A stretch of 64,000 nt of DNA from Schizochytrium sp. TIO01 (lineage: Eukaryota > Protista > Bigyra: Labyrinthulomycetes), in contig SMSO01000004.1 of assembly GCA_004764695.1 (NCBI GenBank), forward strand, positions 1 to 64,000. Reading direction: 5' to 3'. Numbering within the stretch: position 1 is the first letter of the stretch; every line of letters starts with the position of its first letter. This document shows, in pieces, positions 25,300 through 31,520 of this stretch. The position numbers and the translations under genes are program-made. The notes under the pieces are model-generated. The model searched no databases and was not told the DNA's origin. It saw only the letters and a program-made list of their open reading frames with translations.

Positions 25300-28200
25300 G
25301 CTCTTTGTTAGATCCACAAACAACCAAACAAACAATTCCACAACAAACTTGCAATGGCGCGAAGAAAAACATCGGCAAAATAACACACTAGACAACCCAC
25401 GAAGCAACGAACCAACCAACTAACCAAGCCTAGTGTACAAACGAGTCCATAAACTACGGTGTTATTAAGTTAACTTACTTAAGTGATGTCAGCGACCGGT
25501 TCTCTTTCAGCGCCGCACCCACTGCCTTGGCGCCCTCTGAGCCGATTTGGTGGCCTTGAAGACTGTCAATTCGATTGAATGATGGCAAGCAATACATTAC
25601 ACGTTACATATTACAATAGATGCACGCATGCATCCATGGACGTGAGTGATCTAGGTTGGCTTTCAGCATTAATCTTTGTTGTGTTGTCATTTTGCTCTTT
25701 GTTCGATGGATGTATACTCACTCAAACAGACAAATCATCCATCCATCAAACAAACAAGCGATTGCATAAACTTGCAAAACAACACCGACCCACCCACCAA
25801 ACAACAAACCAAGCATCATGTACAAACACGTCCACGAGCTGCGGTGTTGCGTAGACAACTTACGATAGTGATGTCAGCGACTGGTTCTCTTTCAGCGCCG
25901 CACCCACTGCCTTGGCGCCCTCGTCGCCGATATCGTTGCCTCCAAGACTGTCGATTTGATTGAATGATGGCAAGCAATACATTACACGTTACATATTACA
26001 ATAGATGCACGCATGCATGCATGGACGTGAGTGATCTAGGTTGGCTTTCAGCATTTATCTTTGTTGTGTTGTCATTTTGCGATTTGTTCGATGGATGTAT
26101 ACTCACTCAAACAGACAACTCATCCATCCATCAAACAAACAAGAGATTGCATAAACTTGCAAAACAACACCGACCCACCCACCAAACAACAAACCAAGCA
26201 TCATGCATAAACAAGTCCACGAGCTGCGGTGTTGCGTAGACAACTTACTCAAGTGATGTCAGCGACCGGTTCTCTTTCAGCGCCGCAGCCACTGCCTTGG
26301 CGCCATCGTTGCCAATGCGGTTGCTTCTAAGACTGTCGATTTGATTGAATTATGGCAAGCAATACATTACACGTTACATATTACAATAGATGCACGCATG
26401 CATGCATGGACGTGAGTGATCTAGGTTGGCTTTCAGCACTTATCTTTGTTGTGTTGTCATTTTGCTTTTTGTTCGATGCATATATACTCACTCAAACAGA
26501 CAACTCATTCATCCATTAAACAAACAAACGAGCCATTGCATAAACTTGCAAAAAAATACCGACCCACCCACCAAACAACAAACCAAGCATCATGTACAAA
26601 CAAATCCATGAGCTGCGCTGTTGCATAGAAAACTTACTCAAGTGATGTCAGCGACCGGTTCTGTTTCAGCGCCGCACCCACTGCCTTGGCGCCTTCTGAG
26701 CCGATATCGTTGCAATAAAGACTGTCGATTCGATTGAATAATAGAAAGCAATACATTACACGTTACATATTACAATAGATGCACGCATGCATGCATGGAC
26801 GTGAGTGATCTAGGTTGGCTTTCAGGATTTCATCTTTATTGTATTGTCATTTTGCTGTTTGTTAAATGGGTGCATACTCACTCAAACAGACAACTTATCC
26901 ATCCACCAAACAAACAGCCGATTGCATAAACTTGCAAAACAACACCGACCAAAATAACACACCAACGAAGCAAGCATCATGTACAAACAAGTTCGCGAGC
27001 TGCGGTGTTGTGTAGACAACTTACGATAGTGATGTCAGCGACTGGTTCTCTTTCAGCGCCGCACCCACTGCCTTGGCGCCCTCTGAGCCGATCTTGTTCC
27101 ACTCAAGACTGTCGATTTGATTGAATGATGGCAAGCAATACATTACACGTTACATATTACAATAGATGCACGCATGCATGCATGGACGTGAGTGCTCTAG
27201 GTTGGCTTTCAGCATTTATCTTTATTGTGTTGTCATTTTGCTCTTTGTTCGATGGATGTATACTCACTCAAACAGACAACTTATCTATCCATCAAACAAA
27301 CAAGCGATTGCATAAACTTGCAAAACAACACCGACCCACCCACCAAACAACAAACCAAGCATCATGTACAAACAAGTCCATGAGCTGCGGTGTTGCGTAG
27401 ACAACTTACGATAGTGATGTCAGCGACCGGTTCTCTTTCAGCGCCGCAGCCACTGCCTTGGCGCCCTCGTCGCCGATATCGTCGCCAGAAAGACTGTCGA
27501 TTTGATTGAATGATGGCAAGTAATACATTACACGTTACATATTACAATAGATTCACGCATGCATGCATGGGCGTGAGTGATCTAGGTTGGCTTTCAGCAT
27601 TTATCTTTGTTGTGTTGTCATTTTGCTCTTTGTTCGATGGATGCAAACTTAGTCAAAAAGGCAACTTATCCATTCATCAAACAAACAAGCGATTGCATAA
27701 ACTTGCAAAACAACACCGACCAAAACAACAAACCAACGAAGCAAACATCATGTACAAACAAGTCCATGAGCTGCGCTGTTGGGTAGACAACTTACTCAAG
27801 TGATGTCAGCGACCGGTTCTCTTTCAGCGCCCCAGCCACTGCCTTCATGCCCTCGTCGCCGATTTTGTTGCCATCAAGACTGTGGATTTGATTGAATGAT
27901 GGCAAGCCATACATTACACGTTACATATTACAATAGATGCACGCATGCATGCATGGACGTGAGTGATCTAGGTTGGCTTTCAGCATTTATCTTTGTTGTG
28001 TTGTCATTTTGCGATTTGTTCGATGGATGTATACTCACTCAAACAGACAACCCATCCATCCATCAAACAAACAAGCGATTACATAAACTTGCAAAACAAC
28101 ACCGACCCACCCACCAAACAACAAACCAAGCATCAGGTACAAACAAGTCCACGAGCTGCGGTGTTGCGTAGACAACTTACTTGAGTGATTTCAGTGACCG

Positions 28201-31200
28201 GTTCTCTTTCAGCGCCGCACCCACTGCCTTGGCGCCCTCTGAGCCGATATAGTTGCTTCTAATGCTGTCGATTTAATTGAATGATGGCAAGCAATACATT
28301 ACACGTTACATAGTACAATAGATGCACGCATGCATCCATGGACGTGAGTGATCTAGGTTGGCTTTCAGCATTTATCTTTATTGTGTTGTCATTTTGCTCT
28401 TTGTTCGATGGATGTATACTCAGTCAAACAGACAACTTATTTATCCATCAAACAAACAAGCGATTGCATAAACTTGCAAAACAACACCGACCCACCCACC
28501 AAACAATAAACCAAGCATCATGTACAAAGAAGTCCACGAGCTGCGGTGTTGCGTAGACAGCTTACTGTAGTGATGTCAGCGACCGGTTCTCTTTCAGCGC
28601 CGCACCCAATGCCTTGGCGCCCTCGTCGCCGATCTTGTTGCCCCAAAGACTGTCGATTTGATTGAATGATGGCAAGCAATACATTACACGTTACATATTA
28701 CAATAGATGCACGCATGCATGCATGGACGTGAGTGATCTAGGTTGGCTTTCAGGATTTATCTTTGTTGTGTTGTCATTTTGCTCTTTGTTCGATGGATGT
28801 ATACTCACTCAAACAGACAACTTATCCATTCATCCATTCATCCATCCATCCATGCATCAAACAAACAAACAAACAAGCGATTGCATAAACTTGCAAAACA
28901 ACACCGACCCACCCACTAAACAATAAACCAAGCATTATGTACTAACAAGTCCACGAGCTGCGGTGTTGCGTAGACAACTTACTTGAGTGATGTCAGCGAC
29001 CGGTTCTCCTTCAGCGCCGCAGCCACTGCCTTGGCGCCCTCGTCGCCGATATCGTTGCCTTCAAGACTGTCGATTTGATTGAATGATGGCAAGCAATACA
29101 TTACACGTTACATATTACAATAGATGCACGCATACATGCATGGACGTGAGTGATCTAGGTTGACTTTCAGCATTTATCTTTGTTGTGTTGTCATTTTGCG
29201 ATTTGTTCGATGGATGTATACTCACTCAAACAGACAACCCATCCATCCATCAAACAAACAAGCGATTACATAAACTTGCAAAACAACACCGACCCACCCA
29301 CCAAACAACAAACCAAGCATCATGTACAAACAAGTGCACGAGCTGCGGTGTTGCGTAGACAACTTACTCAAGTGATTTCAGCGACCGGTTCTCTTTCAGC
29401 GCCGCAGCCACTGCCTTGGCGCCCTCTGAGCCGATGCGGTTGTTTGTAAGACTGTCGATTTGATTGAATGATGGCAAGCAATACATTACACGTTACATAT
29501 TACAATAGATGCACGCATGCATGCATGCATGGACGTGAGTGATCTAGGTTGGCTTTCAGCATTTATCTTTGTTGTGTTGTCATTTTGCTCTTTGTTCGAT
29601 GGATGTGTACTCACTCAAACAGACAACTCATCCATCCATCAAACAAACAAGCGATTGCATAAACTTGCAAAACAACACCGACCCACCCACCAAACAACAA
29701 ACCAAGCATCATGTACAAACAAGTCCACGAGCTGCGGTGTTGCGTAGACAACTTACGATAGTGATGTCAGCGACTGGTTCTCTTTCAGCGCCGCACCCAC
29801 TGCCTTGGCGCCCTCGTCGCCGATATTGGTGACCGAAAGACTGTCGATTTGATTGAATGATGGCAAGCAATACATTACACGTTACATGTTACAATAGATG
29901 CACGCATGCATGCATGGACGTGAGTGATCTAGGTTGACTTTCAGCATTTATCTTTGTTGTGTTGTCATTTGGCTCTTTGTTCGATGGATGTATACTCCCT
30001 CAAACAGACAACCCATCCATCCATCAAACAAACAAGCGATTGCATAAACTTGCAAAACAACACCGACCCACCCACCAAACAACAAACCAAGCATCATGTA
30101 CAAACAAGTCCACGAGCTGCGGTGTTGCGTAGACAACTTACTTGAGTGATGTCAGCGACCGGTTCTCTTTCAGCGCCGCACCCACTGCCTTGGCGCCCTC
30201 TGAGCCGATATCGTTGCCAAAAAGACTGTCGATTTGATTGAATGATGGCAAGCAATACATTACACGTTACATATTACAATAGATGCACGCATGCATGCAT
30301 GGACGTGAGTGATCTAGGTTGGCTTTTAGCATTTAATCTTTGTTGTGTTGTCATTTTGCTCTTTGTTCGATGGATGTATACTCACTCAAACAGACAACCC
30401 ATCCATCCATCAAACAAACAAGCGATTGCATAAACGTGCAAAACAACACCGACCCACCCACCAAACAACAAACCAAGCATCATGTACAAACAAGTCCACG
30501 AGCTGCGGTGTTGCGTAGACAACTTACTTGAGTGATGCCAGCGACCGGTTCTGTTTCAGCGCCGCAGCCACTGCCTTGGCGCCCTCTGACCCGATATAGT
30601 TGTAAAAAAGACTGTCGATTTGATTGAATGAGGGCAAGCAATACATTACACGTTACATATTACAATAGATGCACGCATGCATGCATGGACGTGAGAGATC
30701 TAGGTTGGCTTTCAGCATTTATCTTTGTTGTGTTGTCATTTTGCTGTTTGTTCGATGGATGTATACTCACTCAAACAAACAACCCATCCATCCATCAAAC
30801 AAACAAGCGATTGCATAAACTTGCAAAACAACACCGACCCACCCACCAAACAACAAACCAATCATCATGTACAAACAAGTCCACGAGCTGCGGTGTTGCG
30901 TAGACAACTTACTTGAGTGATGCCAGCGACCGGTTCTGTTTCAGCGCCGCAGCCACTGCCTTGGCGCCCTCTGACCCGATATAGTTGTAAAAAAGACTGT
31001 CGATTTGATTGAATGAGGGCAAGCAATACATTACACGTTACATATTACAATAGATGCACGCATGCATGCATGGACGTGAGTGAGCTAGGTTGGCTTTCGG
31101 CATTTACCTTTGTTGTGTTGTCATTTTGCTCTTTGTTCGATGGATGTATACTCACTCAAACAGACAAATCATTCATCCATCAAACAAACAAGCGATTGCA

Positions 31201-31520
31201 TAAACTTGATAAACAACACCGACCCACCCACCAAACAACAAACCAAGCATCATGTACAAACAAGTCCACGAGCTGCGGTGTTGCGTAGAGAACTTACGAT
31301 AGTGATGTCAGCGACCGGTTCTCTTTCAGCGCCGCAGCCACTGCCTTGGCGCCCTCGTCGTCGATATCGTTGTCAAAAAGACTGTCGATTTGATTGAATG
31401 ATGGCAAGCAATACATTACACGTTACATATTACAATAGATGCACGCATGCATGCATGGACGTGAGTGATCTAGGTTGGCTTTTAGGATTTCCTCTTTGTT
31501 GTGTTGTCATTTTCCTCTTT
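25300..31520. repeat. ~385-bp tandem array (16 units = 84-nt exon + ~301-nt intron)
   Basis: Exon-start spacing is 385-389 bp, with one of 417 bp due to CCAT/CAAA slippage in the intron. Confidence 0.97.

What the first reader, a model, noticed from the sequence alone, without database searches (positions are those of the whole stretch)
25479..31381. Hypervariability confined to ligand-face codons: candidate variable-receptor (adaptive-like immunity) system
Seen: introns and LRR scaffold are nearly identical between units, but the x positions of xLxxNx differ in almost every exon. In transcript order they read D-LFDND, S-LFYNY, N-LFYNY, N-LFGND, N-LSVTN, S-LTNNR, D-LEGND, N-LWGNK, H-IRSNY, N-LDGNK, D-LSGDD, S-LEWNK, S-LYCND, D-LRSNR, D-LGGND, S-LQGHQ. 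Whole codons are replaced, aromatic residues (F/Y/W) are common, and no stop appears. Known: these positions line the concave beta-sheet edge that binds ligand in LRR receptors, and the same focused variation marks lamprey VLRs, plant NLRs and brown-algal ROCO LRRs. Inference: diversifying selection or a targeted diversification mechanism acting on a pathogen-recognition repertoire. Thraustochytrids host large DNA viruses (mirusviruses reported in Aurantiochytrium, from memory). No NACHT, kinase, signal peptide or TM segment is visible, suggesting a cytosolic sensor or binder.
Basis: partly seen in the sequence, partly recalled or inferred. Interest (0 to 1): 0.9.

Follow-up and report, generated by a model that had tools for sequence, protein, structure and literature searches.

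The report
Hypervariable LRR gene hidden in subtelomeric repeats
A 385-base "spacer" repeat beside the chromosome-end ribosomal genes of a thraustochytrid protist is really a spliced gene built from 16 near-identical leucine-rich-repeat exons that differ almost only at a few predicted binding-surface codons. This looks like an inherited repertoire of variable binding proteins, not an adaptive immune system.

Summary
Window 25479-31381 (minus strand) holds 16 exons of 84 nt, each with an AG acceptor and a GTAAG donor, separated by ~301-nt introns. Diversity (pi) is 0.056 in introns and about 0.03 in the scaffold. It is 0.5-0.8 at exon nt 5-9, 14-16, 23-25 and 82-84.

Across 188 such exons from about 20 arrays the pattern holds:
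- intron pi is 0.043 and hypervariable pi is 0.5-0.74;
- there are no stops against ~60 expected;
- aromatic residues are twice as common as expected.

The locus matches the published "LORE-TEARS Group 0" spacer of Aurantiochytrium limacinum, described there as non-coding.

Best reading: the cassettes evolve in concert, and selection keeps surface codons diverse. Tail dS between paralogues is 0.14-0.28, against cassette pi of 0.045. Recent duplicates show no excess change at the variable sites, and changes there are allele swaps. This argues against targeted hypermutation or adaptive-like immunity.

An immune role is untested. The closest known systems are fungal NLR repeats, Ectocarpus ROCO exons and Tetrahymena 90-bp exon arrays. 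The scan has reported this family before on other DNA of the same genome.

The parts
31636..31700 (-). Exon 1: ATG at 31700, 21 codons (MSDHPSVVAALEQLQNGATIL) plus GA, giving a phase-2 donor GA|GTAAGT
   Evidence: The exon is conserved upstream of other arrays with the same phase.
31382..31635 (-). Intron 1 (254 nt). It holds a (GCTT)21 microsatellite (31540-31623 on the + strand as AAGC), and its 3' half is the standard cassette intron.
   Evidence: The microsatellite length varies from 84 nt to more than 500 nt among paralogues.
31298..31381 (-). LRR exon 1 (LFDND..., junction codon after it Ser)
30913..30996 (-). LRR exon 2 (LFYNY)
   Evidence: All 84 nt are identical to exon 3, while the introns differ at 7/301 sites.
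30528..30611 (-). LRR exon 3 (LFYNY)
30142..30225 (-). LRR exon 4 (LFGND)
29757..29840 (-). LRR exon 5 (LSVTN)
29368..29451 (-). LRR exon 6 (LTNNR)
   Evidence: An exact 301-nt skip 29066/29368 appears in run X1.
28983..29066 (-). LRR exon 7 (LEGND)
28566..28649 (-). LRR exon 8 (LWGNK), donor GTAAGC
28181..28264 (-). LRR exon 9 (IRSNY)
27796..27879 (-). LRR exon 10 (LDGNK)
27410..27493 (-). LRR exon 11 (LSGDD)
27025..27108 (-). LRR exon 12 (LEWNK)
26638..26721 (-). LRR exon 13 (LYCND)
26249..26332 (-). LRR exon 14 (LRSNR)
   Evidence: An exact 301-nt skip 25947/26249 appears in runs X1 and X7.
25864..25947 (-). LRR exon 15 (LGGND)
25479..25562 (-). LRR exon 16 (LQGHQ)
25183..25478 (-). Last intron (296 nt, GTAAGT...CTAG), diverged from the cassette intron
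   Evidence: Contigs in X1, X3 and X7 join to 25174-25182.
24864..25182 (-). Terminal exon: one base completing a Lys codon, then 105 codons (MSWGMNEMREEL...GPYIFE) and a TAA stop at 24864-24866. It is a lineage-specific helical tail.
   Evidence: The MMETSP transcript ORF P0005 joins an LRR exon directly to this tail.
25411..31521 (.). The 385-bp tandem array as seen by TRF. It corresponds to the published 'LORE-TEARS Group 0' position between the 18S gene (19349-21138) and the 5S gene (32169-32287).

Best explanation
This is one member of a germline family of about 70 genes. They are built from several hundred or more near-identical 385-bp exon-plus-intron cassettes, and each exon encodes one 28-residue ribonuclease-inhibitor-type LRR.

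The gene has 575 codons: a 21-aa cap, 16 LRRs and a 105-aa helical tail. It has no signal peptide or enzymatic domain, so the product is probably a cytosolic horseshoe-shaped binder.

Shown here:
- Cassettes are exchanged and homogenised within and between genes. The likely routes are unequal crossing-over and gene conversion between the near-identical introns and scaffolds, favoured by the subtelomeric position.
- As a result, neutral cassette sites differ by only about 4.5%, while the single-copy tails of the same genes differ by dS 0.14-0.28.
- Against this homogenisation, four or five codons on the beta-strand and loop stay near-saturated in diversity. These are x28, x2, x3 and x5, plus dimorphic x8 and x15.
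- Those codons are always open and are enriched in aromatic and charged residues.
- The variable alleles occur in almost all combinations.

Inferred:
- Selection on the binding surface keeps or favours different residues in different repeats and genes.
- This yields an inherited repertoire of LRR proteins with distinct surfaces, possibly for recognising variable ligands such as virus or other non-self proteins.
For: - Gene model and splicing: conserved 5' exon; exact CT..AC 301-nt skips in X1/X7, absent from the deeper run X19; an MMETSP transcript joins an LRR exon to the tail.
- LRR type.
- Family size: at least 399 cassette matches. About 70 tail copies at 59% identity or more, only 3 with stops.
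- Diversity contrast: (intron pi 0.043, scaffold pS 0.05, variable nt 0.5-0.74).
- Selection on coding: 0 stops against 59.7 expected (minimum 44 in 1000 shuffles). Aromatics 15.4% against 7.6% (z=9) and aliphatic plus Pro 4.8% against 9.0%.
- Concerted evolution: tail dS 0.14-0.28 against cassette pi 0.045. Intron similarity is decoupled from variable-site similarity. r2 falls to background beyond 2-5 nt, and the three-base alleles TCA/GAC and CAA/TGA/ATC occur in all combinations. Two of three changes between recent duplicates are multi-base allele swaps.
- Structural placement: in the model of relative P0002 the strand segment covers the positions equivalent to x28-x5, with pLDDT about 80.
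Against: - Nei-Gojobori pS is about equal to pN inside codons 2, 5 and 8, so a textbook dN/dS above 1 is not shown there.
- A synonymous base (nt 82) is hypervariable, while other synonymous bases one position from variable codons (nt 4, 13, 22) are not. Neither simple hitch-hiking nor simple positive selection fully explains this.
- Recent duplicates give only 3 variable-site events, too few to measure a rate.
- The RNA evidence is at family level. The short contigs cannot be assigned to this locus, and the runs are only guessed to be RNA.
- No ligand or phenotype is known.
Confidence: 0.62

Rival explanations
1. Fixed specificities, with no arms race. Each repeat's surface residues are held by ordinary purifying selection for a constant partner. 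The repeats only look 'hypervariable' because concerted evolution erases all other differences.
For: Recent duplicates keep their variable residues. L025 versus L027 shows 0/128 changes, and five adjacent exon pairs are identical despite 2.5% intron divergence. Tails evolve under weak purifying selection.
Against: About 70 paralogues each carry a different set of surface residues. There are 144 distinct variable haplotypes among 188 exons. The alleles are freely reshuffled. Where recent duplicates do differ in exons, 6 of 10 changed bases fall on the 16 variable sites and all three events change the amino acid. Some copies are broken, indicating gene birth and death.
Confidence: 0.15
2. A targeted diversification mechanism, either germline or somatic. 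This could be hypermutation or cassette copying aimed at these codons, as in lamprey VLR assembly or chicken Ig gene conversion.
For: Variation comes in contiguous 3-6 nt blocks. One block (nt 82-84) is out of codon register and includes a synonymous base. Linkage is nearly absent between blocks 3-57 nt apart. Near-identical introns would provide homology for copying.
Against: There is no excess of change at these sites in collinear duplicates. At the family-wide rate ratio about 36-45 changes would be expected, and 6 are seen. Identical exons persist while introns diverge. The germline gene is already complete and open. No base-specific mutation signature is visible in the codon tables. The intron RNA has no special structure, z -0.48. 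Contig data cannot show somatic variants.
Confidence: 0.07
3. Local mutational hot spots or unconstrained sites. The variable bases are simply neutral or mutation-prone, with no selection for diversity.
For: pS is about equal to pN in three variable codons. The synonymous nt 82 varies.
Against: Neutral sites cannot exceed the neutral level set by introns and scaffold synonymous sites, which is about 0.045. There are zero stops against about 60 expected, and the residue composition is skewed. The third base of codon 3 is C in about 85% of exons and never T.
Confidence: 0.07
4. [quoted passage not shown]
For: It was published as spacer repeats without database similarity. It sits in a regular position at almost all chromosome ends.
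Against: All 188 units have AG/GT at fixed positions and no stops. There are LRR_6 and PDB matches. A start exon and a tail exon are conserved. Spliced contigs and an MMETSP transcript exist.
Confidence: 0.02

Closest known systems
LORE-TEARS 'Group 0' repeats of Aurantiochytrium limacinum MYA-1381 (Collier et al., bioRxiv 10.1101/2023.06.15.545109)
   Same: About 385-bp units, lying between the telomere-proximal 18S gene and the 5S gene. The chromosome-end layout also matches: a TTAGG telomere of about 480 bp, rDNA transcribed toward the telomere, and 5S transcribed away.
   Different: The paper calls them spacers lacking similarity to GenBank and suggests a chromosome-end role. It never mentions LRR or leucine. 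Here the unit is an 84-nt LRR exon plus intron inside a complete gene. This copy has 16 units rather than the typical ~9.
Fungal NLR repeats with high internal conservation: Podospora HNWD WD40, ANK and TPR (PMC1805685, PMC4986451)
   Same: Near-identical repeats are exchanged within and between paralogues (concerted evolution). About four hypervariable codons per repeat lie on the binding surface, and repeat number varies.
   Different: The fungal repeats are WD, ANK or TPR, and no LRRs were found in fungal NLRs. They lie inside one exon, with no intron per repeat, and are attached to NACHT or NB-ARC domains. RIP is proposed as the mutation source. Here the repeat is an RI-type LRR with one exon per repeat, and this gene has no NTPase.
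Ectocarpus ROCO / type I LRR exon shuffling (PMC3341825; PMC11378527)
   Same: It is also a stramenopile. It has one LRR per symmetric exon, exons recombine within and between loci, the variable or selected sites lie on the concave face, and it is a candidate receptor family. One paralogous array here runs into a Roc-type P-loop.
   Different: Ectocarpus has 72-nt exons encoding 24-residue plant-type LRRs. It has inactivated and reverse-strand exons in its introns, and its introns are not reported as near-identical cassettes. This gene lacks Roc-COR and ends in a novel helical tail.
Tetrahymena 90-bp-exon LRR arrays (PMC6564038)
   Same: Tandem exon-intron repeat units of uniform exon length. 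Introns are phase 2. The young copies retain nucleotide identity and concentrate in subtelomeric regions. Unequal crossing-over is proposed.
   Different: The exons are 90 bp. The paper reports a LINE-like element association. The term 'positive selection' does not occur in that paper, and a hypervariable-codon analysis was not found in the passages read.
Lamprey variable lymphocyte receptors
   Same: Diversity is concentrated on the concave face of LRR modules.
   Different: VLR germline genes are incomplete and are assembled somatically from flanking cassettes. Here the germline gene is complete, and no somatic change is shown.

Membership tests
Ribonuclease-inhibitor-type LRR (Pfam LRR_6, 28-29-residue repeats) | Repeat period of 28-29 residues | tested here: met
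   All 16 exons (and 188 genome-wide) are 84 nt, or 28 codons.
Ribonuclease-inhibitor-type LRR (Pfam LRR_6, 28-29-residue repeats) | Sequence match to the LxxLxLxxN-x-(I/L)G-x-x-G-A...L consensus | tested here: met
   LRR_6 is the only Pfam hit for 4 of 5 single exons, at E 1e-4 to 6e-3. Scores of 17-22.5 bits are below the 23.4-bit whole-protein cut-off, because one exon is only part of one repeat. phmmer hits ribonuclease inhibitor, NOD2 and ciliary RI-like LRR chains.
Ribonuclease-inhibitor-type LRR (Pfam LRR_6, 28-29-residue repeats) | Alternating strand/helix horseshoe fold | tested here: inconclusive
   The spliced protein was not folded (joined step left out). A natural relative, P0002, folds with a 28-residue strand/helix period at pLDDT about 80.
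LORE-TEARS Group 0 (A. limacinum subtelomere) | ~385-bp tandem units between the telomere-proximal 18S gene and the nearest 5S gene | tested here: met
   The period is 385, the 18S gene is at 19349-21138 and the 5S gene at 32169-32287. The paper's text was read.
LORE-TEARS Group 0 (A. limacinum subtelomere) | TTAGG telomere about 480 bp long, with rDNA transcribed toward it | tested here: met
   (CCTAA)x98.8 lies at window 1-487. The rDNA is on the minus strand.
Concerted-evolution repeats with hypervariable sites (fungal HIC-repeat type) | High internal repeat identity, and more homogeneity than in flanking single-copy parts | tested here: met
   Cassette neutral pi is 0.043-0.05, against tail dS of 0.14-0.28.
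Concerted-evolution repeats with hypervariable sites (fungal HIC-repeat type) | A few codons per repeat under positive diversifying selection (site-model dN/dS above 1) | tested here: inconclusive
   pN is 10-16 times the neutral reference. Within-codon pN/pS is about 1 for codons 2, 5 and 8 and about 3 for codons 3 and 15. PAML/FUBAR were not available, and recombination would invalidate tree-based tests.
Concerted-evolution repeats with hypervariable sites (fungal HIC-repeat type) | NACHT or NB-ARC NTPase in the same protein | tested here: not met
   The gene consists of a cap, LRRs and a tail only. The tail has no Pfam hit.
ROCO LRR receptors (Ectocarpus type) | One LRR per symmetric exon | tested here: met
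   84-nt exons, with phase-2 introns on both sides.
ROCO LRR receptors (Ectocarpus type) | Roc-COR GTPase downstream of the LRRs | tested here: not met
   It is absent from this gene. A paralogous array (L014) continues into a Roc/Ras P-loop, at 26 bits against a 27-bit cut-off, truncated by the end of the locus.
VLR-like somatically assembled receptor | An incomplete germline gene completed from donor cassettes | tested here: not met
   The germline reading frame is complete from ATG to TAA, and every junction codon is a sense codon.
VLR-like somatically assembled receptor | Cell-to-cell sequence differences at the locus | not testable with these tools
   Only assembled contigs of public runs could be laid, and these drop rare variants.

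The most novel reading that the evidence does not exclude
The near-identical introns could be the homology substrate for a regulated, inducible exchange of LRR exons among the roughly 50 chromosome ends. Clonal lineages of this protist would then acquire new receptor surfaces within a lifetime. That would be a recombination-based, adaptive-like recognition system in a unicellular stramenopile that carries persistent mirusviruses.
Probability: 0.06. Interest if true: 0.95.

Novelty: new variant of a known kind. Interest (0 to 1): 0.62.

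Why it matters
First, it changes the reading of a published genome feature. The 'universal' subtelomeric spacer repeats of Aurantiochytrium would be protein-coding, so nearly every chromosome end carries a different member of a variable LRR family.

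Second, it adds a clean example outside animals, plants and fungi of repeat homogenisation combined with protected hypervariable surface codons. The example is an RI-type LRR with one exon per repeat.

Third, because thraustochytrids are culturable, transformable and persistently infected by mirusviruses (PMC12606086), two questions become directly testable. One is whether such repertoires serve immunity. The other is whether subtelomeric recombination diversifies them.

Tried and rejected
The genome-wide analysis therefore rests on the 30 loci.
It was redone with a consensus computed from window exons.
- The tail gave nothing in Pfam or the ESM Atlas, and only 4 hits among 1.8 billion representatives.
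- No fold search was run on the tail model, because elongated helices give meaningless matches.
- The intron RNA fold is not better than shuffles, z -0.48, and Rfam found nothing in the array. An intron-encoded RNA was therefore rejected as the reason for intron conservation.
- The long 'skips' (695-4967 nt) were considered as exon skipping and rejected. They carry unaligned variable letters and land on generic scaffold, so they are junction contigs of paralogues.
- A regex scan for LRR motifs in the other subtelomeric arrays was uninformative. The motif is split by the intron even in the true array.
- An antisense coding reading was rejected on splice sites and LRR matches, although the + strand has 91-97-aa open stretches.
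- Tree-based site models (PAML/FUBAR) were not run. They are not installed, and the pervasive recombination seen would invalidate them.
- Exons were searched one by one by reference.

Full report
**What is in the sequence.**
TRF reports a 385-bp unit repeated 15.8 times at 25411-31521. On the minus strand each unit contains an 84-nt open segment preceded by AG and followed by GTAAGT (GTAAGC once).

The exon begins with the third base of a codon and ends with two bases of the next. All introns are therefore phase 2, and every junction codon is a sense codon: GA|T, TC|T, AA|T, CA|C and so on.

Upstream, an ATG at 31700 opens a 65-nt exon (MSDHPSVVAALEQLQNGATIL + GA) with a GTAAGT donor in the right phase. 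Its intron carries a (GCTT)21 microsatellite and then the 3' half of the standard intron.

Downstream, a diverged 296-nt intron ends at CTAG|A (25183/25182). The frame then runs 105 more codons to a TAA at 24864-24866.

By arithmetic the coding sequence is 65 + 16x84 + 316 = 1725 nt, or 575 codons. Exons were handled one at a time by reference.

**Is it a gene?**
- Single exons hit only Pfam LRR_6 (E 1e-4 to 6e-3).
- In the PDB they hit ribonuclease inhibitor, NOD2 and ciliary RI-like LRR proteins.
- The unit occurs at least 399 times in the 64-Mb assembly.
- In the 30 loci returned plus the window I found 188 distinct exons. All have AG and GT at the same positions, none has a stop, and they give 138 different peptides.
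- Shuffling bases within the variable columns gives 59.7 stops on average (minimum 44 in 1000 trials), against 0 observed.
- Contigs of runs X1 and X7 (guessed to be RNA) contain exact 301-nt skips with CT..AC ends at 25947/26249 and 29066/29368, which are the predicted exon junctions. The deeper run X19 does not.
- Contigs in X1, X3 and X7 also join an LRR exon end to 25174-25182, the predicted last acceptor.
- An MMETSP transcript ORF (P0005) reads retained intron, LRR exon, one junction codon, then the tail, in that order.
- These RNA data come from family members. The short contigs cannot be assigned to this locus.

**The tail.**
The 105-aa C-terminus has no Pfam or Atlas match. Only four proteins among 1.8 billion representatives resemble it. 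Two of them are transcripts or metagenome proteins with ordinary, diverged RI-type LRRs followed by the same tail. AlphaFold on a six-sequence alignment predicts three helices: 2-46 at pLDDT about 90, then 49-63 and 71-104.

The genome holds about 70 copies at 59% identity or more, of which only three have a stop. About 20 further copies lie at 35-41% identity. One of the broken copies is L006.

**The hypervariability.**
In the window, intron pi averages 0.056, with one of 301 columns above 0.5. Exon nt 5-9, 14, 16, 23-25 and 82-84 have pi 0.46-0.79. Most remaining exon columns are at 0-0.13, with a few (nt 11, 22, 28, 59, 66, 74, 75) reaching 0.23-0.33.

Genome-wide the same columns have pi 0.49-0.74. 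The 301 intron columns average 0.043 (maximum 0.44), and scaffold synonymous sites about 0.05.

In protein terms the variable residues are the split junction codon x28, then x2, x3 and x5 of L-x-x-L-x28-L1-x2-x3-N4-x5-I6. Their entropy is 3.1-3.5 bits, against 0.6 or less elsewhere. Two dimorphic positions add to this: codon 8 (Ser TCA / Asp GAC) and codon 15 (Ala/Gly).

By the textbook LRR motif these are the solvent-facing positions of the inner strand and the loop after it. In an AlphaFold model of the natural relative P0002 (pLDDT about 80 in the LRR part), the equivalent residues fall in the strand segment. Codon 8 is the first residue of the helix.

Residue use at codons 2, 3 and 5 is far from what their base composition predicts:

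| Class | Observed | Expected |
|---|---|---|
| Aromatic | 15.4% | 7.6% (z = 9) |
| Aliphatic plus Pro | 4.8% | 9.0% |
| Stops | 0 | 33 |

**How the pattern arises.**
Four results bear on mechanism.

(i) Homogenisation across genes. The single-copy tails of four family members differ by dS 0.14-0.28 (dN/dS 0.5-0.9). That is three to six times the neutral diversity of the cassettes in the same genes. The cassettes have therefore been homogenised across genes.

(ii) Introns and variable sites are uncoupled. Units with identical 301-nt introns can differ at 7-11 of 16 variable bases. Exon scaffold distance does track variable-site distance, while intron distance does not. Exchange breakpoints therefore lie mainly in introns.

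(iii) Free reshuffling of alleles. Among 139 non-redundant units, r2 between polymorphic columns is high only within a codon and falls to background beyond 2-5 nt. The three-base alleles TCA/GAC (codon 8), C/G (nt 45) and CAA/TGA/ATC (nt 82-84) occur in all combinations at about product frequencies. Recurrent point mutation cannot produce that pattern, but recombination or conversion can.

(iv) No hypermutation in recent duplicates. Three pairs of collinear, recently duplicated arrays give these differences:

| Site class | Differences |
|---|---|
| Intron | 42/8281 |
| Scaffold | 4/1496 |
| Variable | 6/352 |

The variable-site differences fall in three events, all changing the amino acid. 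Two are multi-base swaps at nt 82-84, one of them ATC to TGA, which is a swap between two common alleles. At the family-wide rate ratio of 20-25 fold, about 36-45 changes would be expected. In addition, five adjacent exon pairs are identical over 84 nt while their introns differ by 2.5%.

Together these results point to a well-mixed population of cassettes under concerted evolution. Surface-codon diversity is retained or favoured by selection and redistributed by exchange. They argue against a continuously acting hypermutator.

**What does not fit neatly.**
- Nei-Gojobori pS is about equal to pN within codons 2, 5 and 8, where both are saturated. pN/pS is about 3 in codons 3 and 15.
- The third base of codon 3 is C in about 85% of exons and never T, whereas at codon 5 the D, N and Y codons (GAT, AAT, TAT) never end in C. 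This speaks for derived non-synonymous changes on an ancestral codon.
- The synonymous base nt 82 is hypervariable and tightly linked to nt 83-84. Yet the synonymous bases nt 4, 13 and 22, which also touch variable codons, are not variable.
- I have no single model that explains both behaviours. Long-lived alleles at x28, x8 and x15 alongside younger, multi-allelic x2, x3 and x5 is my best guess.

**Identity of the locus.**
- The window starts with (CCTAA)x99 (1-487).
- It then has 371-bp and 416-bp arrays.
- An rDNA unit follows, transcribed toward the telomere (15609-21138).
- Next comes the 385-bp array.
- A 5S gene transcribed away from the telomere follows at 32169-32287.

This is the layout described for Aurantiochytrium limacinum MYA-1381. 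The paper places a 'Group 0' LORE-TEARS element of ~9 units of ~385 bp between the 18S and the 5S gene. It calls these elements spacers lacking similarity to GenBank and suggests a chromosome-end role. The words LRR and leucine do not occur in it, and no other paper in the library uses the term. The organism assignment is my inference from this match, since genomes here are unnamed.

**Relation to what is known.**
- Repeat homogenisation plus a few hypervariable binding-surface codons is established for fungal NLR WD, ANK and TPR repeats (PMC1805685, PMC4986451).
- One-LRR-per-exon shuffling with variable concave-face sites is described for Ectocarpus ROCO genes (PMC3341825).
- Uniform exon arrays with phase-2 introns in subtelomeres are described for Tetrahymena (PMC6564038).

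This case combines these traits in an RI-type LRR, in a labyrinthulomycete, with a novel tail and a place at nearly every chromosome end. One paralogous array runs into a Roc-type P-loop. The same cassettes therefore also serve as sensor domains of signalling proteins.

Earlier notes of this scan on other pieces of the same genome reached similar conclusions. I re-tested these points independently here.

**Verdict.**
The 'targeted mechanism / adaptive-like immunity' half is not. An immune function remains a hypothesis.

Noticed in passing
window 4667-9679 (-): A 1670-aa open reading frame with a Ty1/copia-type reverse transcriptase (RVT_2, E 2.5e-17). It appears to be a retrotransposon lodged between the subtelomeric repeat arrays.
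   Followed up: partly
window 851-4293, 10237-11374, 13002-14628: Three more long tandem arrays with periods of 371, 360 and 416 bp. The 371-bp and 416-bp arrays sit where the paper places LORE-TEARS Groups 2 and 1. I did not establish whether they are also exon-intron cassettes, because a simple motif scan was uninformative.
   Followed up: partly
window 31540-31623, and the first introns of L002, L016, L019, L029, L030: The (GCTT)n microsatellite in intron 1 ranges from 84 nt here to more than 500 nt in paralogues. Some copies have (GGTC)n or (GCTC)n variants at its 5' edge.
   Followed up: no
each cassette intron, e.g. window 29067-29367 (-): Every intron carries a G-run motif (GGTGGGTGGGTCGG), a (GATG)n stretch and an alternating purine-pyrimidine run (CATGCATGCATGCGTGC). 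The paper reports G-quadruplex predictions in LORE-TEARS. A possible recombination-promoting role is untested.
   Followed up: no
L006:2185-2499 (G000:C13:4020974-4021288): This paralogue's tail exon has a premature TAA, and two other tail copies also carry stops. This is evidence of gene death in the family.
   Followed up: partly
L014:2910-3385 (G000:C13, about 4.008 Mb): This array ends with a diverged LRR exon (LSVNGIGSEGAKAVAAALDENHVLQEI). After an intron it continues into a Roc/Ras-type P-loop (KLMVVGKGGAGKTS), making it a ROCO-type member that uses the same cassettes.
   Followed up: partly
G000:C30:5479-5484 kb (+), C30:5516-5521 kb (-), and C5:1794-1798 kb: Three almost identical copies of one array plus tail, with 1-7 differences in 3.4 kb. 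Two of them form an inverted pair about 33 kb apart inside a 9.7-Mb contig. This may be a recent duplication or two chromosome ends joined in the assembly.
   Followed up: no
G000:C24:5825838-5831220 (-): The array shows a higher-order repeat of exon signatures (LNR-TSK-SYH-LNR-SWN-LNR, twice). This is a trace of multi-unit unequal crossing-over.
   Followed up: no
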